IMG/VR virus record: IMGVR_UViG_3300005253_001115
Span: 62,001-126,000 of that record
Length of the DNA stretch: 64,000 nucleotides
Reading direction: 5' to 3' (one strand)
This document shows, one piece after another, positions 2,536-38,974 of this stretch (position 1 is the first letter of the stretch; each line of letters starts with the position of its first letter). A program made the position numbers and the translations under genes. The notes beneath the pieces were generated by a model, which ran no database searches, had not been told where the DNA came from, and saw only the letters and a program-made list of their open reading frames with translations.

Positions 2536-9004
<6,469 letters not shown>

Positions 9005-9005
9005 G

Positions 9006-10478
9006 ATGGCTCATCGTCACCAAATCATCATCATACCCAATGTAATAGACATGAAGGCCCTGGACTTTGATGGAACTGAACAGTTGCTTAACTCCTCAGA
9101 CAACCCACTTGGTATCGCTAATGAGTGGAGCATTCAGATAAACGCCAATCCCGGTAGCGATTCTAACGATATTTACTTGTTGCGTATTCAACCGATTACC
9201 GGGTTTGGTAATCAAATAGCTATTCATTTAAGAGGAGATCAAGCTAACGACCCGATTAGCGTACGGATTTTGCGTGCTAATGGAAATTCCCTGAAAGATT
9301 ATGAATGGGACAGCACCTACACCGTAGGGACAAAGGTTTCCTATATTGTCACCTGGGACGGCACGGATTTGCTGCTCTACATAGACGGAGTGCTAACTGC
9401 GGCTGATACTTTGATCTCCGATTTCTCCTCAGCAATGACCGCAACAGACAGAAGAGTTTCTGTGGGGTCAGCGCTGGGTGGTGTGCCCTGGGTAGGTTTG
9501 ATTCATTCAACTTCTGTGTGGAATGTGGTGCTTACCCAAGCAGAGATTACTACTCTTCAGAACAGCGATTCCCCGGAAAATATAGACAACAGATTCAACT
9601 CCGGTGACTACTTTAGTTCGGCGAACCTTCAGCATTACTGGCGTCATGGGTTGGATGCAGCAGATATAGGCAAGGATTCAGGAAAAGCATCAACGCTCAT
9701 CGACATCGGTGACAACGCCACGGGCATCACAGCAGATGATATCGTGGAATACACCTCGGGAGTTGAAGATACGAAGGCCCTGGATTTCACTACAGGTGAA
9801 CATCTTAGAAACACCACAGAGCAAGCAATAGGTATAGCTAATACTTGGTCTATTCAAGCAAACTATGAGCCTTCAAATGTTGCATTTGAGTTCTCGGTGA
9901 TGGGAATCGGAACCAACAACACTAACAAAGATATGATTCGATTTGATCTTATAGGGAATGTAGCAAATGATCCTTTGCGCATAATTCTAACCGAGAATGA
10001 CACCACAGTAATCAAGCAGTATGATTGGGAGAGTGTTCATACCCTCGGTGTCAAAATAAGTGTGATCGCGACATGGGATGGCACCAATCTTGTCGTGTAT
10101 ATAGATGGGGTAGAAACCGCTGCTACCACCAAGACTACAGACAATGCAGGGTCTCAATTAGCCACTGTACGGTCAGTAGCAGTAGGCGGTAGAACTGTCG
10201 GCTCATTTTCCTTCTCTGGGGATATTCATTCGGTTTCTGTGTGGGATTCAGTCCTCACTCAAGCAGAGGTGACTTCCCTTCAGAATTCAAGCTCACCGCA
10301 GAGCATCGACAATCGCTTTGACTTTGGCAGCTATGCAAGCTCATCCAACCTTCAGCACTACTGGCGCTGCGGGTTCGATGCCACAGATATTGGCAGGGAT
10401 TACGGCAACGCTTCCACGCTCATCGACATCGGTGACAACGCCGAGAACATCACAGCAGATGATATTGTGACCTACTGA
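9006..10478 (+). CDS. Tandem LamG-like (two-domain) protein
   Basis: Two homologous ~245-aa repeats (ALDF...WSIQ.N...TWDGT.L..YIDGV...SVW..VLTQAE...LQHYWR.G.D...IDIGDNA..ITADDIV). Confidence 0.8.
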   Translation: MAHRHQIIIIPNVIDMKALDFDGTEQLLNSSDNPLGIANEWSIQINANPGSDSNDIYLLRIQPITGFGNQIAIHLRGDQANDPISVRILRANGNSLKDYEWDSTYTVGTKVSYIVTWDGTDLLLYIDGVLTAADTLISDFSSAMTATDRRVSVGSALGGVPWVGLIHSTSVWNVVLTQAEITTLQNSDSPENIDNRFNSGDYFSSANLQHYWRHGLDAADIGKDSGKASTLIDIGDNATGITADDIVEYTSGVEDTKALDFTTGEHLRNTTEQAIGIANTWSIQANYEPSNVAFEFSVMGIGTNNTNKDMIRFDLIGNVANDPLRIILTENDTTVIKQYDWESVHTLGVKISVIATWDGTNLVVYIDGVETAATTKTTDNAGSQLATVRSVAVGGRTVGSFSFSGDIHSVSVWDSVLTQAEVTSLQNSSSPQSIDNRFDFGSYASSSNLQHYWRCGFDATDIGRDYGNASTLIDIGDNAENITADDIVTY

Positions 10479-10925: not shown

Positions 10926-13199
<2,274 letters not shown>

Positions 13200-22371: not shown

Positions 22372-27431
<5,060 letters not shown>

Positions 27432-27434
27432 CCC

Positions 27435-28664
27435 GTGGCATCTAGAGCAATTCGCAATACAACCCTATCAGATATTTTTCTGGATGATATTGGGACTCGT
27501 ATTCCTGCGAGCACGATCCTCGAAATTCATCCGTCTAATGTTCAACTGTGGCACAATTCCGCAGACGGCGGCGACGCCGAGCCCTTCATCGACAATGGCG
27601 ACCTAGTTGTTTCTGACGAGAACGGAGATCTTGCCCCAGACCACGGCAAGAGCTTCCTAAAGCTGGACCATGTTCACATCCAGATCAACGGGGTACCGCA
27701 TTACGGGTCCGTTAAGGTCATCAATTTTGAGGGAGCCACAGGCAGCACCGCCGTTGGCTCTATCGTCAACATCTCAGGCTTGCAGGGTGAAACTGGCCTG
27801 ACTGGAAATGTTGGCGCTTCGGGCACTACAGGCACCCAAGGTACCACGGGTGAGACAGGAGCAACTGGAGAAACTGGAGCAACTGGTATCACAGGAGCCT
27901 CTGGTGAAACAGGTGCTACAGGTTCGACAGGACAGACTGATTTTCAAGACGTGATTGTTTTGAATGTAGAAGCACCAGTAGATGGTGATGAGGTCTGTCT
28001 AGAAGCTTTCGCATTCTATCCGTATGAAATTCTTAGCATCGGACAACACACTAGCGTGGGTTACATCGAGACCACAATCAAAGTGGCTGGCGCTACTGTT
28101 GGTGCATTCGAAGAGCTGTCAGCCACAGCAGGGTCTACAGCTACAGACGCAACGGGTGAAACAGGCGTAGCAATCGGTGACGATGTTTCCATCTCGTTCA
28201 CTGGGTCCTCTACAGGCCCCGCCAACTACTGCATGTCCATGAATATTCGTAGGTTGAATCCCCAGGATAACGACTTCATCGGCAGCACCGGAGCAACTGG
28301 CATCGCAGGAGCCTCGGGCGAGACAGGAGCAACGGGTGCCTTCGATATCGAGCAGCTTGAGCTTTATTGGCAGGGTAACCTTTCGAATCTGCTAGTAGAT
28401 ATCACGCTTGTAGAAAACGCCTTCTATACTTTCGACGTGCATGAAGTATGCCGCTCAGTGAGTGCGGGTTCTGCAACATTAGACTTCAAAATCGAAGGAA
28501 CTTCCATCGGTGGTCTTGGCGCTCTGGCTGCAACGGCGGGTTCGACCTGCGCCAGTGAGACTGGTGCCAATAGCGTGGCTATTGGGGAAAAGCTCAGCTT
28601 GGGCGTAACAGGCGTCTCCAGCGGTGCCAACTTGGCTATCTCTATGAAGACGACTAGGACATAA
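27435..28664 (+). CDS. Short-collagen protein with two KTTR-type C-terminal modules
   Basis: GTG start. [11 protein letters not shown]...PAS N-terminus as in 25359; ends LAISMKTTRT. Confidence 0.78.
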   Translation: MASRAIRNTTLSDIFLDDIGTRIPASTILEIHPSNVQLWHNSADGGDAEPFIDNGDLVVSDENGDLAPDHGKSFLKLDHVHIQINGVPHYGSVKVINFEGATGSTAVGSIVNISGLQGETGLTGNVGASGTTGTQGTTGETGATGETGATGITGASGETGATGSTGQTDFQDVIVLNVEAPVDGDEVCLEAFAFYPYEILSIGQHTSVGYIETTIKVAGATVGAFEELSATAGSTATDATGETGVAIGDDVSISFTGSSTGPANYCMSMNIRRLNPQDNDFIGSTGATGIAGASGETGATGAFDIEQLELYWQGNLSNLLVDITLVENAFYTFDVHEVCRSVSAGSATLDFKIEGTSIGGLGALAATAGSTCASETGANSVAIGEKLSLGVTGVSSGANLAISMKTTRT

Positions 28665-33000: not shown

Positions 33001-36000
33001 ATGGCATCCAATCCTAGTTTTCGACTGGTAAACACGCGATACGTGCCGCCCGGTGTATACATCGGACAGCTCATTATCCCCAGGCCCACGAACCTCACGG
33101 CAGACGCAAGGCTGCCCGCCTTCATTGGCGTTGGTAACCGATTGGCCGAGGGTAAAAACATCGCGATTCGGCGCTCTTTCATCTTCGAAGAGTCGCTTGC
33201 GTTTACGTCACTTTCACCCCACGTAGCGCAGCTCGTATTCAATGCAGATCAGGACCAGAACGCTCCGGGCATCCAGCTCCGTAAGCAGGACGGTACTGTC
33301 GTGCGTACTGACTTCTGGAACTTCACAGAGAGCGTAAGCGACAGCGGTGTATTCGATCAGGTAACCATCTCGCTAGAGGCTTTCGATCCGACTGCCACCT
33401 ACCTCATTGATTACCAGTCAGTCGAGCGCACCCCGCAGGATGTGATTCCGGTCGAGGAACTTCGAGAAGTTGTTACCGTTGGACTGTCGGAGGATGCTCC
33501 CCAGTTCCGAGAGAACATCGACTTCTTCATCGTAACTGATGTAACTGACCCGCTTGCTGACCTTGGTAACGTAAACACGGACTCGGTTCCCGAGGCGGTT
33601 TCGGCCGACGCTGGTAACACGGGTGCCATGGTTATCACGCAGGCTACATCTTCCGAGTTCGCTCATAACTACAACCGCTACTATACTCTAGAGTGCAACA
33701 ATGCTTCAGGTTCTTCTCCGAACCGGACGGCTTCATTCCTTCTTCGCAGTATACCCGCTGGGGGCGGTAACAACGCCCTTCCGCCGCGACCACTAAACGC
33801 TATAGAGGCTGCTACTACTCTCGTGATTACAGAGGGAGTAAACCAGTTCAGTATCGAGATTGAACTTGGAATCGAGCTTGACTTCGCATTCCCGGCCGGT
33901 TCAGGTAACGCCGCAGTAGCAGATGAGTTCGCCTTCCACGGCTTTGGCCCTGGTCTGGTTGAGCCTGACGCTCGCTACGACAACACGAACCAATTCCCCG
34001 AAGCTACAGGCATTGTAGTTGGCGATTCGAACTCCGGCTCCGGCTCCATCGCCGTGGCCACTACGACGGACTTCACCCGTGACTTTAACACTGGGTTCTC
34101 CCTACGTGTTGTAGGCATCGCAGGTTCCTCTCCTACCCGGACAGTAACCTTCGCATGGGCGTCGTTCATCGAGCTTGGCCCGGACGGAACTTTCACGGCA
34201 GATGAGGCTGTACCCAACACGCTGACGGAGAGTCTAGCTTTCGGTGTCGATGTAGACATCAGCTTCGGCTCCTCGAACTTCGCAGTTGGTGACGACTTCG
34301 CCTTCATTGCAAATGCTCCGGCTCTACGGTACTCCGGTAAGGACAACCGAACTTACACCCTGACGACCGGCTCCACAGCCAACATCGTGAGCCTCCCTGT
34401 TGCTCAGACTGACCCGCTGACTAGCAGCCTCCTGTCCGTTCCCCGTGTTGTGGGTACTGCGGTTGGTGAGTTCAACACGGATACTCCTGAGGGCGGCTTC
34501 GGTTCCTACGAAGCTAGCCAGCAGAACTGGTTCGATCCGCTGAACCCTGATGCCCGCACCGGCCACTTTCTCTTCCCTGATAACGTCAAGATGGCGTTCC
34601 GTAATCAGTGTCGAGGCGATGGTTTCGCAGGTAACCGTGAGCAGGGTGGCGACAAGCACTCCTTCACTGCAAACGATCAGAACACCATCGACTGGAGCCT
34701 GGTACAGCAGCGAGAGCAAGAGTTTGAGACGGACGATCTTATCGTAGATGTAAATGGAACTGTTACGGGTATCCCTGGTCAGACCTACATCATTCTCGCT
34801 GAGATTCCTGAGGACGGCACTGTTGCGGTAGTTACCACTTCGGGTCTGGTTCCGGTAGCCTCGGTAGAGGTTCCTGGTTCTCCCTTCGTGTCACTTCCGG
34901 TGACTCCGACCGAGACGGTTACCGCCTCTTACGATACTCGTGGCTCTGAGCCCGATCCGGGTCAGCTCTACTACTTCACAGGAAACTTCCTGCGTGGTAC
35001 AGAACTGTACAACACTCCGATCCTTGTACTCGACCGTGATGACGGACGTACTCTCCTGGGTCCGCCCTCTGTAGACAACCATCTGCACATCACCAACGAG
35101 CTTGCGTTCGACAACAACGTATTCGGTGCCTATTACATTCAGGTAGCCGACGCAGACGAAGACGGCGTGTTCCAGCAGACAGACTTCAAGACGGCGCTTC
35201 TAGCAACCGAGAATGTGGAAACGATCACAGATCGCGTGGTCCTGGCCCGCCAGGACGCTTGGGGTGACCAGCTTGCAGTCAACGAGCGAGCCAACGATCC
35301 CTTCGCACGACGCGAGTCGCTTGATTGGTTCGGTGCTCCGATTGGTACCCCGATTGGTGACCGCCAGACTGCCGACACGCTTCGCTTCATTGCGGATAAG
35401 CCGCTACGAGTGTTCGGCAACTCCCCCTCCCACGGTACCAGAATTCTGGCAGGACCGACGCAGGCTACAGTTAACATCGTCCTACAGTCTGGTGATACCG
35501 TAGAGGTTACAGTTGACGGGTCGTTCGTCGCTGCCGCTCTGGCATCGCTAACAGCTAGTTTCGCAGATCCGGCCAACACGGTTCTCAAGAAGAACCTCGC
35601 TGGCTTCACGAGTGTACAGACGTACACCCCGAAGGAGAACGCGCTACTCGGTGATGCTGGTGCAATCTACGTAACCGATCTCGGTAACGGTGTCGTCCGT
35701 ATCGAAGAGGATACAACGGTTGACACGTTCGCCATTGACTTCTACCTAATCTCGGCCATGACGCAAAAGCAGTTCGTGACCAAGGTTGTACGTAGGGAGA
35801 TGGCTAACTCGGTCATCGCGCTGATCGTGCCTAGCGCTGCTGCCGGTGTTGGCATCATCAAGGCTAGCCTCTCTGCCATCTTGCTCGGCCTTCTTGGTCA
35901 AGGCATCATCGGTCAGTACGAGGACGATCAGCAAAACGTAAGGAAGTTTGACCCCGAGGCAGACGTGGTAGTTTTCCGAGATTCGGCAGATTCCACTCTC

Positions 36001-36105
36001 TACCACATGTTCTACGCATACTTCCTGCGATTCCCGATCAAGCGCGTGTTTGGTCTATTTACCGTAAACACAAACGATTTCGGCGTGGGGTCAGGTAACC
36101 CGTAA
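33001..36105 (+). CDS. Tail sheath protein
   Basis: N-terminal YVPPGVY motif and a C-terminal sheath-core pattern (SFVAAALASL...GF...AIYVT..GNG..RIEEDTT..F...IS...QK..V..VR...Y.LRFPIKR.F). The tube gene follows. Confidence 0.85.
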   Translation: MASNPSFRLVNTRYVPPGVYIGQLIIPRPTNLTADARLPAFIGVGNRLAEGKNIAIRRSFIFEESLAFTSLSPHVAQLVFNADQDQNAPGIQLRKQDGTVVRTDFWNFTESVSDSGVFDQVTISLEAFDPTATYLIDYQSVERTPQDVIPVEELREVVTVGLSEDAPQFRENIDFFIVTDVTDPLADLGNVNTDSVPEAVSADAGNTGAMVITQATSSEFAHNYNRYYTLECNNASGSSPNRTASFLLRSIPAGGGNNALPPRPLNAIEAATTLVITEGVNQFSIEIELGIELDFAFPAGSGNAAVADEFAFHGFGPGLVEPDARYDNTNQFPEATGIVVGDSNSGSGSIAVATTTDFTRDFNTGFSLRVVGIAGSSPTRTVTFAWASFIELGPDGTFTADEAVPNTLTESLAFGVDVDISFGSSNFAVGDDFAFIANAPALRYSGKDNRTYTLTTGSTANIVSLPVAQTDPLTSSLLSVPRVVGTAVGEFNTDTPEGGFGSYEASQQNWFDPLNPDARTGHFLFPDNVKMAFRNQCRGDGFAGNREQGGDKHSFTANDQNTIDWSLVQQREQEFETDDLIVDVNGTVTGIPGQTYIILAEIPEDGTVAVVTTSGLVPVASVEVPGSPFVSLPVTPTETVTASYDTRGSEPDPGQLYYFTGNFLRGTELYNTPILVLDRDDGRTLLGPPSVDNHLHITNELAFDNNVFGAYYIQVADADEDGVFQQTDFKTALLATENVETITDRVVLARQDAWGDQLAVNERANDPFARRESLDWFGAPIGTPIGDRQTADTLRFIADKPLRVFGNSPSHGTRILAGPTQATVNIVLQSGDTVEVTVDGSFVAAALASLTASFADPANTVLKKNLAGFTSVQTYTPKENALLGDAGAIYVTDLGNGVVRIEEDTTVDTFAIDFYLISAMTQKQFVTKVVRREMANSVIALIVPSAAAGVGIIKASLSAILLGLLGQGIIGQYEDDQQNVRKFDPEADVVVFRDSADSTLYHMFYAYFLRFPIKRVFGLFTVNTNDFGVGSGNP

Positions 36106-36129
36106 GCCCAATTAGCAAGGAGCTAAACA

Positions 36130-36513
36130 ATGCAAGGTTCACGACTTGTCACACTATGCAGGATTGCTGCCCATCTTGATTCCGAAAAAGTGGGGAAGCA
36201 CGCCCTTGCCGCACAGATCTACGACGTTCTTGCAACGCAGGTAGATCTGTCGCCCGAAGGTAAGAAGCTTCTTCAGGACTTCTTCGGGTTTGGGGTAAAC
36301 GGCGAACAAGACTTCGAGGTAGGAGATTTCGGCGAGAACGTGCCGGAGTCCGACTATCAAACGAAGCGAGATCCTTTCCTTGATCCGTCCTCGGAGCGAA
36401 TGCCTGAGCCTAAGAGCGATATGCTCGCGGGTGTCAATGAGGCTGCCGCTGCTTTGGAGAGTCATGGGGAGTTCGTTCTTGCTCGGGCCTTGAGGTTCGA
36501 GTACGGAGCGTAA
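36130..36513 (+). CDS. Hypothetical protein
   Basis: AAGGAG SD. Its stop abuts the ATG of the endonuclease. Confidence 0.7.
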   Translation: MQGSRLVTLCRIAAHLDSEKVGKHALAAQIYDVLATQVDLSPEGKKLLQDFFGFGVNGEQDFEVGDFGENVPESDYQTKRDPFLDPSSERMPEPKSDMLAGVNEAAAALESHGEFVLARALRFEYGA

Positions 36514-37302
36514 ATGGTTTACGGTAGGATCTACAAAGCTGAATTCCCTAATGGGAAGCTGTATGTAGGTCTTACCACCATGCGTTTGAAGATCCGGGTA
36601 GACTGTCACATGGGTTCTTCTCGTTCCCAGAAGCATAGAGGATGTGTAGCTTTTAACAATGCCATCCGAAAGCATGGGAAACCCGTCTTCACGGAACTTT
36701 GCACAGCGGACTCTAAGGAAGAATTGGACGCAGCGGAAGTACATTGGATTGCTAAATTGGGAACTATGGTTCCGGCTGGTTACAACATCAAAGAAGGTGG
36801 CGGTAACGGTAAGCACTCTGGAGAAACTAAGCGGAAGATGAGTAAGACCCGTGCAGGCATGAAAATGCCTCCCAGAACGCCGGAACAGTGCCTGAACTAT
36901 CGAAGGCTTGGTGAGCAGAACGCTAATTTCGGGAACCCTCGCAGTGCTGAGACACGCCAAAAAATAGGCGACGCACAGCGGGGCAATAAGAATCACCGAT
37001 TCGGAGCCAAGTGGGACGAAGAGCACTTGGTTATGTTTAGTGAAAGGCAACTAGGGGAAAAGAATCATTTTCACGGCCAGAAGCACACTGCTTCCGCTAA
37101 AGACAAGATGTCTGCGAAAAAGAGAAAATTCTCCAAAGAAGATGTAATTGAGATCTTACGACGCTCGGGGGAAGGCGAAACTCAAAAAAGTATCGCAAAA
37201 TCCTATAGTGTGAGCCCGACAACAATTAGTAGAGCTATCAACGGAAAACGCCGTTGCTACTCTAACCAAGGAGCAATAATGCCTAACCCTTCGCCTCAGT
37301 AA
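36514..37302 (+). CDS. Free-standing GIY-YIG homing endonuclease (NUMOD3 repeats, C-terminal HTH)
   Basis: GRIY-x9-LYVGLT, AE.HWI....T..P.GYN, KHSGETKRKMS / RSAETRQKIG / KHTASAKDKMS. The C-terminus reads through tube exon 1 (MPNPSP), and the TAA lies 4 nt inside the intron. Confidence 0.88.
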   Translation: MVYGRIYKAEFPNGKLYVGLTTMRLKIRVDCHMGSSRSQKHRGCVAFNNAIRKHGKPVFTELCTADSKEELDAAEVHWIAKLGTMVPAGYNIKEGGGNGKHSGETKRKMSKTRAGMKMPPRTPEQCLNYRRLGEQNANFGNPRSAETRQKIGDAQRGNKNHRFGAKWDEEHLVMFSERQLGEKNHFHGQKHTASAKDKMSAKKRKFSKEDVIEILRRSGEGETQKSIAKSYSVSPTTISRAINGKRRCYSNQGAIMPNPSPQ

Positions 37303-38096
37303 GGGGCCTTCGAGGAGTAATCCTCGTCGCAAATTCGGTGAATTCGGGGGAACCCCAAACAAGTAAAGTTGTGGGCAATCCCGAGCGAAGCCTAGAAGGA
37401 AACTTCTAGGAACGTGTAACGACTAGACCAGAGCCTAAAGCTTTAGCCACGGCAGTAAGGGTCACTCGGTTGGAGCAATCCTTCAGAGAAGCGCCGGACA
37501 TCCTAGCGGATGATGATATAGTCTGGTCCCTAGTGAAAGTTAGGGAGGTTGGCAGAAATGACCAGCCCTTACCTCGGTAAGTAACAAAACCGTTTGCAAC
37601 CAATGCTTTTGACGTTACGGTGCAGCCGCTCGAACAGGGCGCTGCTGGAGCGCCTACGACGAAGACGTACCACGGTATGTCCATTGTCGTTGGAGGCAAC
37701 ATCGTTGGACGTATCCAGTCATGGCAGCCCAACGCTTACACCCGTGAGGGTGCCCATGTTCGTGAGCTTTCTCACGTAACCTGGGGTCGTCCGATCGACT
37801 ACGTTCCGGGTCAGGCTACTGGCTATACCGTTAGCTTCACTCGCGTGGAAGTTTGGAATCAGGAGCTTGAGCTTACGCTAGGTTTCGGATCGGTCTTTGA
37901 TGACCTCATGGACCAGACTCGCCCGTGGGTTACCCAGGAATATCTCTTCCGTGGTAACGAGCTAAACAAGCTCTGGCAGTACAGCGGTTGCTGGTTCCAG
38001 ACCAAGAACAACAACAACTGGGAGTCAGGCGGCGACGCGATCGTTACGGTCGAGTGTGAGCTGGCTTACGTCTCCCGAGTAAGAGTGGCCGGATAA
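37279..38096 (+). CDS. Tail tube protein, spliced: join(37279..37296, 37593..38096), 173 aa
   Basis: AAGGAG SD at 37268 before ATG 37279. The spliced frame MPNPSP|FATNAFDVTVQPLEQG... continues into a T4 gp19-like tube fold (IGRIQSWQPN..R....VREL...P...VPG...Y.....R.E). Confidence 0.82.
37297..37592 (+). mobile_element. Group I intron (IA-like, 296 nt, no internal ORF)
   Basis: P1 GCCUC/GGGGC with a U.G pair at exon-terminal U37296; P2 37311-37326; P3 UUCGGUG/CGCCGGA; AAUCCCGAGC (Q); P6 hairpin 37391-37410; R GUGUAACGACUA; S AUGAUAUAGUC (P7 GACUA/UAGUC); P8 CAUCC/GGAUG; P9 hairpins; P9.0 GGU(37525)/ACC before terminal G37592. Splicing restores the reading frame. Confidence 0.9.
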
Positions 38097-38974
38097 TGGC
38101 TAAGCCCATCGAGTTCAACTGGACTACGCAGGAACGGATCAAGAGCCACGAGGAATATCTTCGTGGTACTCGGTCCCAGCCCCAGTCCCTTGCTGCTTCG
38201 TTGAACTGGACAACAGCCGTCGCCCCCGATACCGTCATTGATGAAGAAATGCCGGACGTTCTTGATCCCGATGTCAAGTTCCCCGACACCCTCGTGGATG
38301 ATCCCAAGGATAGCGACGACGCTGTGGATCATTCTGACGGTACCAAGCCGCACGATACCAGTGCGGCTCTCTCCTTCGCCACAAACTGGGACGCTCTGCT
38401 TGATACAGCAGGCGTTCCGACCGACGGCACCCCTCCCGATCCACTAGCAGCTCAGCAGCAGCAAGAGCAACTTGAGGAGCAGGCCGCACGACAGGCTCAG
38501 ATGATGGGTCGAGATAACGGCGGCTCACAACCCGGAATTACCAGCCCGCAGATGCCCTCTGCTCCCGCTTCTCCGCAGGTGCAGGATAAGGCCAAGCAAC
38601 GACAGCGTGCTGGCCGTGGCGTTGAGGGCGGACTAGCAGCTTGCGGGATGTTTGTAGCAGAAGCATGCCCTGATGGGGAGTGCGACAACTGCCCCTGTAA
38701 ACAGGGTATACAGGCTGCGGCTTGTGGTGTTATGCTAGCAACAGCGTGCCCGGGCAATGGGGGGTGCGGCAACAAGGTTGCTCTACTGCGTTGCCCAGAT
38801 GTCCGGGGACCAAAAAACCTTATGCCCGTTGCCAATAGAAACTGCCCAAACGGTTCTCCTATGCCTGCCGAAGGCTGCGGTGACTGCCCGGGTTGCGACG
38901 AAGATCCGACCAACCCCATGGACCCCGGGAATAAGTACGATTGGGACAGTTTCTCAACTACTCCCCGCGTCTAA
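38096..38974 (+). CDS. Hypothetical protein with Cys-rich C-terminus
   Basis: TAATG coupling to the tube gene. About a dozen Cys in the last ~115 aa. Confidence 0.7.
   Translation: MAKPIEFNWTTQERIKSHEEYLRGTRSQPQSLAASLNWTTAVAPDTVIDEEMPDVLDPDVKFPDTLVDDPKDSDDAVDHSDGTKPHDTSAALSFATNWDALLDTAGVPTDGTPPDPLAAQQQQEQLEEQAARQAQMMGRDNGGSQPGITSPQMPSAPASPQVQDKAKQRQRAGRGVEGGLAACGMFVAEACPDGECDNCPCKQGIQAAACGVMLATACPGNGGCGNKVALLRCPDVRGPKNLMPVANRNCPNGSPMPAEGCGDCPGCDEDPTNPMDPGNKYDWDSFSTTPRV

What the first reader, a model, noticed from the sequence alone, without database searches (positions are those of the whole stretch)
37297..37592. ORF-less group I intron in an essential structural gene, six codons after the start
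Seen: a full P1-P9 core with extra helices between P7 and P3 (IA-like). The 5' U.G pair, P9.0 and terminal G all agree with frame restoration. Known: phage group I introns mostly interrupt DNA-metabolism genes (td, nrdB, nrdD, pol), and structural-gene cases are uncommon. Automated annotation would truncate the tube at GTG 37620. Tail assembly would depend on ribozyme activity.
Basis: partly seen in the sequence, partly recalled or inferred. Interest (0 to 1): 0.7.

Follow-up and report, generated by a model that had tools for sequence, protein, structure and literature searches.

The report
Group I intron splitting a phage tail-tube gene
A 296-base self-splicing-type (group I) intron interrupts the tail-tube gene of an uncultured marine-sediment jumbo phage six codons after its start, right beside a free-standing homing endonuclease gene; it is a clean, well-supported example of a known kind of mobile element.

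Summary
Rfam RF00028 hits 37279-37545 at 76.8 bits (E 1e-17). Joining ATG 37279..37296 to 37593..38096 gives a 173-aa protein whose first residues, MPNPSP|FATNAF, match intact intron-less homologues (172-174 aa). My P1-P10 model, with P7.1/P7.2 (IA-like), pairs 347 of 360 cells across four tube-gene introns, and 16 pairs carry compensatory changes. The protein has a tail-tube/Hcp fold and follows a sheath-like gene.

It fills the spacer upstream, overlaps exon 1 and stops at the TAA in the intron's P1 loop. Relatives show all four states at this slot: neither element, intron only, HEG only, both. Two independent internal HEG deletions also occur. Intron carriers are not a clade (AU p 0.0035). 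Empty alleles sit beside the HEG+/intron+ form in an independent sediment sample.

Most likely the intron self-splices to make the tube, and the neighbouring HEG drags it into empty alleles (trans or collaborative homing). Splicing and cleavage are untested, because no RNA data covered the site. Precedents exist: Twort orf142 (a tail tube gene with three introns), and S-PM2, T3, T4 mobE and ICP1 for HEG-plus-intron pairs. It is a new member of a known kind.

The parts
33001..36105 (+). 1034-aa tail sheath-like gene, upstream neighbour
   Evidence: phrog_279 tail sheath, E 3.1e-6 over residues 835-994. The order sheath, 127-aa gene, tube is conserved in relatives.
36130..36513 (+). 127-aa gene of unknown function. 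In empty alleles its TAA is followed by a 20-26-nt spacer (L001-L004, L006) or a longer one (178 nt in L007), then the tube ATG
   Evidence: Conserved in L001-L008, L026, L028, L031 and L033. No Pfam or PHROG hit.
36514..37302 (+). Free-standing GIY-YIG homing endonuclease gene (262 aa): GIY-YIG domain, two NUMOD3 motifs, C-terminal HTH. It starts directly after the TAA of the 127-aa gene. It contains the tube RBS and exon 1 in frame and stops at the TAA in the intron P1 loop
   Evidence: Pfam NUMOD3 1.1e-12, GIY-YIG 22.9 bits (cut-off 22.6), HTH families; phrog_314 homing endonuclease 2.7e-30. Family-invariant Y17, R28, H32, E75, N91 are present. Absent from L001-L008. Low GC (0.46-0.51) and A-rich.
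37268..37273 (+). AAGGAG ribosome-binding site of the tube gene, lying inside the HEG coding region, 5 nt before the ATG
   Evidence: Read from the sequence. The function is inferred.
37279..37296 (+). Tube exon 1: ATG + 5 codons (MPNPSP), ending in the U of the U.G pair
   Evidence: Homologue N-termini MPNPSP|F and the intron-less DNA alleles.
37297..37592 (+). Group I intron, 296 nt, no ORF, IA-like (P1-P2-P3-P4-P5/5a-P6/6a-P7-P7.1-P7.2-P3'-P8-P7'-P9-P9.1-P9.2, terminal G 37592)
   Evidence: RF00028 76.8 bits. Pair-by-pair test over four introns. Orthologous introns in L008, L026/L027, L033 and L040.
37293..37307 (+). P1 hairpin: GCCU|C x GGGGC with U37296.G37304. The loop AGUAA holds the stop TAA 37300-37302, in frame with exon 1. 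Bases 37299-37303 also form P10 with 37593-37597
   Evidence: Invariant in all four tube introns. An in-frame stop lies 2-3 codons past the 5' splice site in all four. Rfam's own P1 alignment is shifted 6 nt onto CCCUU, a pairing that is not conserved in L008 or L033.
37421..37523 (+). P7 (GACUA 37421-25 x UAGUC 37519-23) enclosing P7.1 (37426-63), P7.2 (37465-88), P3 3' strand (37492-98), P8 (37499-512) and J8/7
   Evidence: Matches the Rfam consensus AGACUA...AUAGUC. P7.2 has three compensatory pairs.
37593..38096 (+). Tube exon 2 (167 codons + stop). The GTG 37620 ORF found by ORF callers is its truncated form
   Evidence: AlphaFold model m1db2ee3924e3 (pLDDT 69) matches phage 812 tail tube 8q01_G/8r5g_C at E 3e-6 and PVC/AFP/Hcp tubes.

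Best explanation
The tail-tube gene of this 266-kb uncultured marine-sediment phage is split after codon 6 by a 296-nt ORF-less group I intron of the IA type. The pre-mRNA most likely folds into the P1-P9 ribozyme. An external guanosine attacks after U37296, and exon 1 is then ligated to exon 2 after the terminal G37592, guided by P10. This gives the mRNA for the 173-aa tube protein. An in-frame stop just inside the intron keeps ribosomes out of the ribozyme core. Immediately upstream, replacing the normal ~25-nt spacer, lies a free-standing GIY-YIG/NUMOD3/HTH homing endonuclease gene. HEG and intron are separable mobile elements that have converged on the same ~45-bp spot. I infer that the HEG cuts HEG-less alleles of co-infecting relatives somewhere in this spot, and that repair from the donor copies the HEG and, because it is only 18 nt away, the intron as well (trans or collaborative homing). 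The intron keeps the essential gene functional. Once fixed, the HEG decays. Shown: intron identity, boundaries, structure conservation, ORF restoration, HEG domain make-up, presence/absence polymorphism, HEG deletions, and empty and occupied alleles in the same sediment sample. Inferred: actual splicing, HEG activity and cut site, and co-mobilisation.
For: Intron: RF00028 at 76.8 bits, E 1e-17. The exon junction reproduces the conserved N-terminus of 60 homologues of 172-174 aa, including invariant N10, which a GTG 37620 start would delete. Intron-less alleles exist at the DNA level. In the structure test, 347/360 cells are paired and 16 pairs are compensatory across introns only 80-91% identical. 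An in-frame stop follows the 5' splice site in all four introns. Tube identity: Foldseek matches to phage, PVC, AFP and Hcp tubes, and a sheath-like gene lies upstream. HEG: Pfam and PHROG hits, catalytic residues conserved, and compositional oddity. Mobility: all four states occur. Neither element: L001-L004, L006, L007. Intron only: L008. HEG only: L028/L029, L031/L032. Both: window, L033, L026/L027. Intron carriers are not a clade on the tube exon-2 tree (AU p 0.0035). The window's nearest relatives after L026 (L006, L001) lack both elements. In an independent sediment sample (X4) the window form, at 0 differences, sits beside empty alleles: a loose end at 37296 running into TTTGCGACTAAC, and joints 36513->37620 and 36513->37596. 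HEG decay: a 240-bp in-frame deletion that removes most of the catalytic domain (L026, X6) and a separate 118-bp deletion (X7). Precedent for the mechanism: PMC3984707, PMC2790892, PMC10448857.
Against: There is no RNA evidence. No RNA run was listed for the locus, and the two metatranscriptome runs did not cover the intron. The catalytic core helices P1, P3, P4, P7 and P8 are invariant among the four copies, so their support comes from the match to the Rfam consensus and not from covariation. HEG-only genomes keep an intact intron insertion site (TCG CCT|TTT GCC). The intron is therefore not needed for HEG self-immunity, which argues against the strict form of collaborative homing. The HEG's target is unknown, and PDB sequence searches did not link it to I-TevI at a significant level. 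The intron is only moderately more conserved than its flanks (82.7% against 74% for window-L008). That is expected from structural constraint alone and does not prove recent transfer. The tube model is of medium confidence (pLDDT 69).
Confidence: 0.85

Rival explanations
1. Strict collaborative homing. [quoted passage not shown]
For: The ORF-less intron and the free-standing HEG are 18 nt apart. I-TevI-type GIY-YIG enzymes bind at an insertion site and cut about 23-25 bp upstream (my own knowledge of I-TevI, not tested here). Applied here, that would place binding and cutting within the ~45 bp that separate the two insertion points. This arrangement is described in PMC3984707 and PMC10448857.
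Against: L028/L029 and L031/L032 carry a full-length HEG next to an uninterrupted tube gene with the same junction sequence, TCG CCT|TTT GCC. Immunity therefore does not require the intron. Those genomes do differ just upstream (ATG->ATA, with a new GTG start), which might be the protective change.
Confidence: 0.25
2. Independent colonisation. HEG and intron are unrelated invaders of a recombination-prone, conserved spot. The HEG homes into the 127-aa-gene/tube spacer. The intron spreads by other means, such as reverse splicing or plain homologous recombination between co-infecting phages.
For: All four combinations exist, so each element can persist alone. Introns of the same lineage sit in capsid and RNA polymerase genes of other phages, and no related HEG was noticed beside them (not examined systematically).
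Against: This 266-kb genome has a single group I intron hit and, by a protein search with this HEG, two recognisable GIY-YIG HEGs. One of them abutting the only intron is an unlikely coincidence. Any double-strand break within tens of bases co-converts flanking markers (PMC2790892), so co-mobilisation is almost unavoidable if the HEG is active.
Confidence: 0.3
3. HEG turnover. The intron once carried its own internal endonuclease, lost it, and a new free-standing HEG later settled next to it (the alternative raised by Barth et al., PMC10448857).
For: HEGs at this locus demonstrably decay. The hypothesis is discussed in PMC10448857.
Against: None of the four orthologous introns (296-306 nt) shows any ORF remnant or enlarged loop.
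Confidence: 0.1
4. The insert is a dead intron. The tube is translated from GTG 37620 as a 158-aa protein, or the gene is a pseudogene.
For: An ORF from GTG 37620 exists. No RNA data are available.
Against: Exon 1 and the splice-site pairings are conserved. Helices are maintained by 16 compensatory pairs in phages that differ by up to 26% in the neighbouring exon. The 15 residues that would be lost include family-invariant N10. There is no evident RBS before GTG 37620. The form is abundant (word depth about 140-160) in an independent sample.
Confidence: 0.03

Closest known systems
Group I introns of Staphylococcus phage Twort orf142 (tail tube gene; subgroup IA2 by my recollection of the crystal-structure literature)
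   Same: Self-splicing-type group I introns in a myovirus tail tube gene (PMC11878797 states that orf142 encodes a tail tube protein). The window intron's P2-P6 segment gives its only blastn hits to introns of Staphylococcus phages, plus a Vibrio phage thymidylate synthase intron (75-81% identity). The tube model's best structural match is the tail tube of the Twort-like phage 812.
   Different: There is one intron here, not three. It lies at codon 6/7, so exon 1 is only 18 nt. The host is an uncultured 266-kb marine-sediment phage. A free-standing HEG abuts the intron. Splicing is not demonstrated here.
Collaborative homing: F-CphI + psbA intron of cyanophage S-PM2; T3/T7-like phages (Zeng, Bonocora & Shub 2009, as cited in PMC3984707 and PMC10448857)
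   Same: [quoted passage not shown] Both elements are missing from close relatives.
   Different: The HEG family is GIY-YIG, whereas F-CphI uses an Endo VII-type motif (PMC6083498). The HEG is upstream, overlaps exon 1 and terminates inside the intron. HEG-only genomes with an intact insertion site exist, so intron-mediated immunity, the defining point of the strict model, is doubtful.
Trans homing: T4 mobE mobilising the nrdB intron with defunct I-TevIII (PMC2790892)
   Same: An adjacent free-standing endonuclease whose cut need not be at the insertion site drags a non-autonomous intron along by co-conversion. It depends on close proximity.
   Different: MobE is an HNH enzyme and the nrdB intron still carries a dead HEG. 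Here the intron has no ORF at all and the distance is 18 nt. Nothing has been tested experimentally.
ICP1 terminase intron with adjacent T5orf172 HEG (PMC10448857)
   Same: [quoted passage not shown]
   Different: Different HEG family, host gene and phage group.
I-TevI-type GIY-YIG homing endonucleases
   Same: An N-terminal GIY-YIG domain with the canonical Tyr/Arg/His/Glu/Asn set at nearly the same positions, NUMOD3 linker motifs and a C-terminal HTH.
   Different: Free-standing rather than intron-encoded. Sequence similarity to I-TevI is not significant (E 0.37 to 1i3j). The target is unknown.

Membership tests
Group I intron (Rfam RF00028) | Covariance-model score above the curated gathering threshold over the full model | tested here: met
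   76.8 bits against 50, model positions 1-253/253, E 9.6e-18. Orthologues score 65-75 bits.
Group I intron (Rfam RF00028) | P1 pairs the 5' exon end with an internal guide, with a U.G wobble at the splice site | tested here: met
   GCCU|C x GGGGC with U37296.G37304, invariant in four introns. The site agrees with the protein junction.
Group I intron (Rfam RF00028) | Terminal G at the 3' splice site and P10 pairing with the 3' exon | tested here: met
   G37592. P10 is 5 bp in the window, L026 and L033, and weaker in L008.
Group I intron (Rfam RF00028) | Conserved core: P3-P7 pseudoknot, P4-P6 stack, P7 guanosine-binding helix, J8/7 | tested here: met
   All helices can form in all four copies and match the Rfam consensus. 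The core pairs never vary among these copies, so there is no covariation evidence for the core itself.
Group I intron (Rfam RF00028) | Exon ligation restores the host reading frame and product | tested here: met
   The joined exons give 173 aa beginning MPNPSPFATNAF, identical in layout to intact homologues.
Group I intron (Rfam RF00028) | Guanosine- and Mg2+-dependent self-splicing | not testable with these tools
   No RNA run was listed and the metatranscriptome contigs do not cover the intron.
Subgroup IA (IA2-like) | Extra helices P7.1/P7.2 between the P7 5' strand and the P3 3' strand | tested here: met
   A 66-nt insert at 37426-37491. P7.2 and P7.2a have three compensatory pairs. Formal subgroup assignment with GISSD-type models was not done.
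GIY-YIG homing endonuclease | GIY-YIG catalytic domain with conserved Tyr, Arg, His, Glu and Asn | tested here: met
   PF01541 scores 22.9 bits against a cut-off of 22.6, which is marginal. Y17, R28, H32, E75 and N91 are invariant in 27 family members, including the window protein. phrog_314 scores 2.7e-30.
GIY-YIG homing endonuclease | Site-specific DNA cleavage of HEG-less alleles | not testable with these tools
   Only indirect evidence: presence/absence polymorphism at one fixed slot and empty alleles in the same samples.
Collaborative homing pair (free-standing HEG + ORF-less intron) | HEG and ORF-less intron encoded within co-conversion distance | tested here: met
   The HEG ORF overlaps exon 1 and ends 6 nt into the intron.
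Collaborative homing pair (free-standing HEG + ORF-less intron) | [quoted passage not shown] | tested here: inconclusive
   HEG-only genomes L028 and L031 keep the uninterrupted junction TCG CCT|TTT GCC. This argues against the feature, but other protective substitutions nearby cannot be excluded. No cleavage data.
Contractile-tail tube protein (tube/Hcp fold) | Tube/Hcp beta-barrel fold and position next to a sheath gene | tested here: met
   Foldseek probability 1.00, E 3e-6 to 1e-4, TM 0.5-0.65 to phage 812, PVC, AFP, CIS and Hcp tubes. The model pLDDT is only 69. A sheath-like gene lies upstream. No Pfam hit, and the PHROG hit is weak.

The most novel reading that the evidence does not exclude
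The locus may be a snapshot of a mobile intron being born. The free-standing HEG already reads through exon 1 and uses the intron's own in-frame stop in the P1/P10 guide loop. One small rearrangement would then put the HEG inside the intron. In this genome splicing would also remove the HEG's stop codon, so ribosomes that started on the HEG would read on into the tube frame. Splicing would then decide between free HEG and a HEG-tube fusion, a possible coupling of endonuclease output to ribozyme activity.
Probability: 0.1. Interest if true: 0.6.

Novelty: new member of a known kind. Interest (0 to 1): 0.4.

Why it matters
For annotation, the tube gene of this phage and its intron-bearing relatives is mis-called as a 139-160-aa truncated ORF, and the 18-nt first exon is invisible to gene callers. 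The same intron lineage also splits capsid genes in other uncultured phages, so structural genes of environmental phages are probably under-annotated in this way.

For biology, the metagenomic relatives display every stage of the homing cycle at one slot: empty, intron only, HEG only, both, and a decaying HEG. Donors and recipients sit in the same sediment. That gives a natural test case for how free-standing endonucleases and ORF-less introns come together. With an 18-nt exon between them, it could separate collaborative from trans homing with simple in vitro cleavage assays. An intron whose P1 helix lies within the footprint of an initiating ribosome is also a useful case for studying competition between translation and splicing.

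Tried and rejected
1. RNA evidence. A search restricted to RNA listed no run. Two metatranscriptome runs found with kind 'any' covered only exon regions of relatives (X19) or nothing (X20). Joints across the locus occur only in DNA runs, so they are empty alleles and not spliced RNA.

2. An 18-mer from J6/7-P7 returned three contigs (L022, L023, L025) with no Rfam hit and no other similarity. I treated them as chance matches.

3. Rfam's own P1 alignment pairs CCCUU (37287-91) with the guide. That would put the splice site 6 nt upstream, which is also in frame and would give MPNP|F. I rejected it as the main site. That pairing is impossible in L008 and L033, whereas GCCU|C x GGGGC is invariant, and every homologue has six residues before F/Y7. 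Minor use as a cryptic site cannot be excluded.

4. Linking the HEG to solved structures by sequence failed: the single sequence gives E 0.37 to I-TevI 1i3j, and the 27-member profile finds nothing at E < 0.01.

5. L031's HEG first looked N-terminally truncated (229 aa). The full GIY-YIG N-terminus is present in frame, and the gene caller simply chose a later ATG.

6. The in-frame run of the HEG ORF into the intron is not conserved. In L026 and L033 the HEG stops inside exon 1 in another frame, so I do not treat it as a designed feature.

7. The promoter/terminator scan of 35900-38300 gave no more sites than shuffled sequence.

8. Identity figures for partial fragments (g127, sheath3, L033 exon 2) are distorted by end gaps. 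I used the BLAST figures instead.
Full report
WHAT IS THERE. The window is positions 62001-126000 of a 266,640-bp IMG/VR virus record (CheckV completeness 89%). DNA runs that hold the sequence exactly are marine sediment metagenomes. The surrounding genes are phage tail and replication genes. They include several collagen-like tail fibre proteins, a tape-measure-like protein, a DNA polymerase and a 1034-aa sheath-like protein at 33001-36105 (phrog_279, E 3e-6).

THE OBSERVATION. A scan of the whole window against Rfam 15 gives a single hit above the gathering score: RF00028, group I catalytic intron, 37279-37545 on the + strand, 76.8 bits against a cut-off of 50, E 9.6e-18, covering the entire model. 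It is the only such hit in the genome. The 18 bases from ATG 37279 to T37296 encode MPNPSP. The frame that continues from T37593 (FATNAFDVTVQPLEQG...) is the frame of the 158-aa ORF that starts at GTG 37620.

A search with the exon-2 product found 64 proteins. Sixty are 172-184 aa long, nearly all of them 172-174 aa. The closest begin MPNPSPFATNAFDVTVQPLEQ (P0001, 97% identical; P0002, 86%). More distant ones keep MPNxSP(F/Y)xxN, with N10 invariant in a 30-sequence alignment. So 6 + 167 = 173 residues is what the family requires, and a start at GTG 37620 would delete 15 conserved residues.

The DNA of intron-less alleles settles the junction. L001-L003 read TCA CCC|TTC GCA, L004 reads TCT CCA|TTC GCG, and L006 and L007 read TCG CCT|TTT GC.

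STRUCTURE. I derived the helices by hand from the sequence, the Rfam alignment and the minimum-free-energy fold:
- P1: GCCU|C (37293-97) x GGGGC (37303-07), with U37296.G37304.
- P2: 37311-16 / 37321-26, with a GUAA loop.
- P3: 37334-40 / 37492-98.
- P4: 37344-49 / 37379-84.
- P5 and P5a.
- P6 and P6a: 37391-98 / 37403-10, with a GAAA loop.
- P7: GACUA 37421-25 / UAGUC 37519-23.
- P7.1 (37426-63) and P7.2 (37465-88, GCAA loop), both in the 66-nt stretch between P7 and the P3 3' strand.
- P8: 37499-503 / 37508-12.
- P9, then P9.1 (GAAA loop) and P9.2.
- The tail UAACAAAACC followed by G37592.
- P10: UUUGC (37593-97) x GUAAG (37299-303).

I tested the model pair by pair on four orthologous introns that are 80-91% identical to one another: the window, L026, L008 and L033. 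Of 360 cells, 347 are standard pairs. Sixteen of the 90 pairs change on both sides and five on one side, all in P2, P5a, P6a, P7.2, P9, P9.1 and P9.2. Most failures are in P9.2, where the automatic alignment of a hypervariable hairpin is poor.

The core helices P1, P3, P4, P7 and P8 never vary. Their support is therefore the match to the family consensus and not covariation. P9.0 can be drawn as two base pairs, but in a different register in the window than in the other three, so I call it consistent and no more. Rfam's own alignment of P1 is shifted 6 nt, and I rejected that register because it cannot form in L008 or L033. [quoted passage not shown] This feature is common in phage group I introns and is thought to keep ribosomes out of the ribozyme (PMC3984707).

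THE HOST GENE. Pfam finds nothing for the protein and PHROGs gives only a weak 'virion structural protein' hit. An AlphaFold model built on the 30-sequence alignment has medium confidence (pLDDT 69, pTM 0.57). Its Foldseek matches in the PDB are uniformly tube proteins. They include the phage 812 tail tube (8q01_G, 8r5g_C; E 3-5e-6), PVC, AFP, Streptomyces and Anabaena injection-system tubes, Hcp, and the lambda and cyanophage A-1(L) tubes. With the sheath-like gene two genes upstream, 'tail tube' is well supported. 'Essential' is an inference from what tubes do.

The 262-aa ORF at 36514-37302 is a homing endonuclease. It hits NUMOD3 (E 1e-12, two copies), GIY-YIG (22.9 bits against a cut-off of 22.6), several HTH families at residues 203-246, and phrog_314 'homing endonuclease' at E 2.7e-30. 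In an alignment of 27 family members, Y17, G19, T21, R28, H32, E75, Y90 and N91 are invariant. These are the classical GIY-YIG catalytic positions, which is my own knowledge of I-TevI numbering and was not tested here. The window protein has all of them.

The gene starts on the base after the TAA of the conserved 127-aa gene (36130-36513). It is lower in GC (0.46-0.51 against 0.53-0.60) and strongly A-skewed compared with its neighbours. Its 3' end contains the tube's AAGGAG ribosome-binding site (37268-73) and the whole of exon 1 in frame. It terminates at TAA 37300-02, which lies in the P1 loop and the P10 guide of the intron. A second, 35%-identical GIY-YIG paralogue lies elsewhere in the genome.

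COMPARATIVE PICTURE. Close relatives of the locus fall into four states.
- Neither element: L001-L004 (metagenome contigs), and L006 and L007 (184-kb and 210-kb IMG/VR contigs). In L001-L004 and L006 the 127-aa gene's TAA, a 20-26-nt spacer and an intact tube gene follow one another; L007's spacer is 178 nt.
- Intron only: L008 (a 78-kb IMG/VR contig), RF00028 at 75.3 bits, with no HEG.
- HEG only: L028/L029 and L031/L032, with a full-length HEG 62-63% identical to the window's, followed after 6 nt by an uninterrupted 175-aa tube gene.
- Both: the window (and L040, the same phage in another assembly), L033 (HEG 68% identical, intron at 72.4 bits) and L026/L027.

L026/L027 is 95-99% identical to the window in the flanking genes. 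Its HEG has lost 240 bp in frame, which removes most of the catalytic domain. The same deletion appears in run X6, and a different, out-of-frame 118-bp deletion appears in run X7.

More distant tube homologues (L009-L021, 42-59% identity) have no intron and no related HEG. On a maximum-likelihood tree of tube exon 2, the window and L026 group with the empty L006 and L001, while the intron-bearing L008 groups with the empty L007. Forcing the intron carriers together costs 21.9 log-likelihood units (AU p 0.0035). Gene conversion of the exon next to an intron could itself distort this tree, so it shows patchiness and not a count of events.

In an independent sediment study (run X4), contigs identical to the window across the HEG and intron (word depth about 140-160) occur alongside contigs of relatives that lack both elements. 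One contig reads from 37296 straight into TTTGCGACTAAC, and others join 36513 to 37620. Run X5 joins 36513 to 37596 with 52 other bases between. Because these are DNA libraries, they are empty alleles and not spliced RNA. They show that potential donors and recipients occur in the same sample.

HOW IT MOST LIKELY WORKS. The intron is maintained by selection as a folded RNA in phages whose flanking exon differs by up to 26%, and its removal is needed to make a conserved structural protein. I therefore put the probability that it splices in vivo above 0.9.

The 5' splice site lies 18 nt from the start codon. That is within the footprint of an initiating ribosome (my own knowledge). Splicing and initiation on the precursor must therefore compete, which is unusual and worth testing.

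For mobility, the intron has no endonuclease of its own, but an apparently intact one sits 18 nt away. In phage crosses, a break made by a free-standing endonuclease co-converts neighbouring markers and can carry a non-autonomous intron along. This was shown for T4 mobE and the nrdB intron (PMC2790892), and for free-standing HEGs that cut at intron insertion sites in cyanophage S-PM2 and T7-like phages (reviewed in PMC3984707 and PMC10448857).

I think the same happens here (probability about 0.55). I favour the looser 'trans homing' form, because HEG-only genomes keep an intact insertion site, so the intron is not what protects a HEG-bearing genome. Those genomes do differ just upstream (ATG to ATA, with a new GTG start two codons earlier), which might be the protective change, but I could not test that. 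The two independent internal deletions fit the usual cycle of invasion, fixation and decay. The HEG reading in frame into the intron is specific to this genome, since L026 and L033 stop in exon 1 in another frame. I regard it as incidental, but I keep the more interesting reading as the novel case.

COMPARISON WITH WHAT IS KNOWN. Group I introns in phage structural genes are less often described than those in nucleotide-metabolism genes, but a tail-tube precedent exists. Twort orf142, which has three group I introns, was later shown to encode the tail tube (PMC11878797). Jumbo phages with many introns in essential genes, and many stand-alone HEGs, have also been described. One set of gut jumbo phages carries about 18 introns per genome, with splicing confirmed by metatranscriptomes (PMC12880540).

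They lie near the 3' end of major head protein genes (L034/L046, L042/L044, L037, L043; 85-94 bits) and in an RNA polymerase beta-like gene (L039). The finding is therefore a new member of a known kind. What is distinctive is the extreme 5' position, the HEG-intron overlap, and the complete set of occupancy states in natural populations.

LIMITS. There is no RNA or biochemical evidence. Only four orthologous introns were available, so the core is supported by consensus and not by covariation. The tube model is of medium confidence. Metagenomic contigs may be chimeric. The host is unknown.

Noticed in passing
L034/L046 (intron 3625-3873 / 3629-3877, - strand), L042/L044 (4135-4373 - / 8871-9109 +), L037 3318-3566, L043 10070-10282, L039 769-1018: Introns that share the window intron's P3'-P8-P7 signature (85-94 bits to RF00028) interrupt major head protein genes (phrog_10, E 1e-55 to 1e-61; in L043 a head protease/major head fusion-type gene) and an RNA polymerase beta-like gene (L039) in other uncultured phages. 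Capsid genes split by this intron lineage seem common in environmental phages.
   Followed up: partly
G000:C1:55804-56256 (+), outside the window (locus L049): A second GIY-YIG homing endonuclease paralogue in the same phage genome (35% identity over residues 3-153, open frame 264 aa). No group I intron was detected near it. A third, weak HTH-only match lies at C1:254678-254875.
   Followed up: no
window 36590-36839; L026 702-1238; runs X6 and X7: Two independent internal deletions of the HEG in natural populations, both starting within 10 bp of each other: 36598->36839 (240 bp, in frame, removes most of the catalytic domain) and 36590->36709 (118 bp, out of frame). A third joint from 36590 (to 37620) appears in run X4. 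This may be a deletion hot spot.
   Followed up: partly
L028 4756-4790; L031 4066-4100: In the HEG-only relatives the usual tube start ATG is ATA, and the gene starts at a GTG two codons upstream (VSIPNPSPF...). This is a local change right where an I-TevI-like enzyme bound at the junction would be expected to cut. It might be the self-immunity change, but this is untested.
   Followed up: no
window 37287-37291 with 37302-37306: A second possible P1 register (CCCUU x AAGGG, the one Rfam's alignment chose) would give an in-frame cryptic 5' splice site after U37290, and so a tube protein two residues shorter. It exists only in the window and L026 sequences.
   Followed up: partly
protein P0061 (157 aa, NCBI 'GNAT family N-acetyltransferase [Chloroflexi bacterium]'): A database protein whose first half is 96% identical to the middle and C-terminal part of this tube protein, and whose second half is a GNAT acetyltransferase. 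This is probably a chimeric contig in a Chloroflexi MAG. At most it is a very weak hint about the host.
   Followed up: no
window 4251-7346, 10926-13199, 22372-24789, 25359-26858, 27435-28664: At least five large ORFs with collagen-like repeat tail-fibre signatures (phrog_6320, phrog_5073 and others, E down to 1e-114). This is an unusually rich tail-fibre arsenal upstream of the sheath-tube module.
   Followed up: no
L007 2823-3000: This empty relative has a 178-nt spacer between the 127-aa gene and the tube ATG, against 20-26 nt in the other empty alleles. It could be the remnant of a lost insertion.
   Followed up: no
window 37307-37434 (query 1308-1434): The intron's P2-P6 segment is 75-81% identical to intron segments in Staphylococcus phages (PH15, phiIPLA5 and the E72 family within tail-associated cell-wall hydrolase genes; Kayvirus-type myoviruses) and in a Vibrio phage thymidylate synthase gene. 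The lineage therefore crosses very distant phage groups.
   Followed up: no
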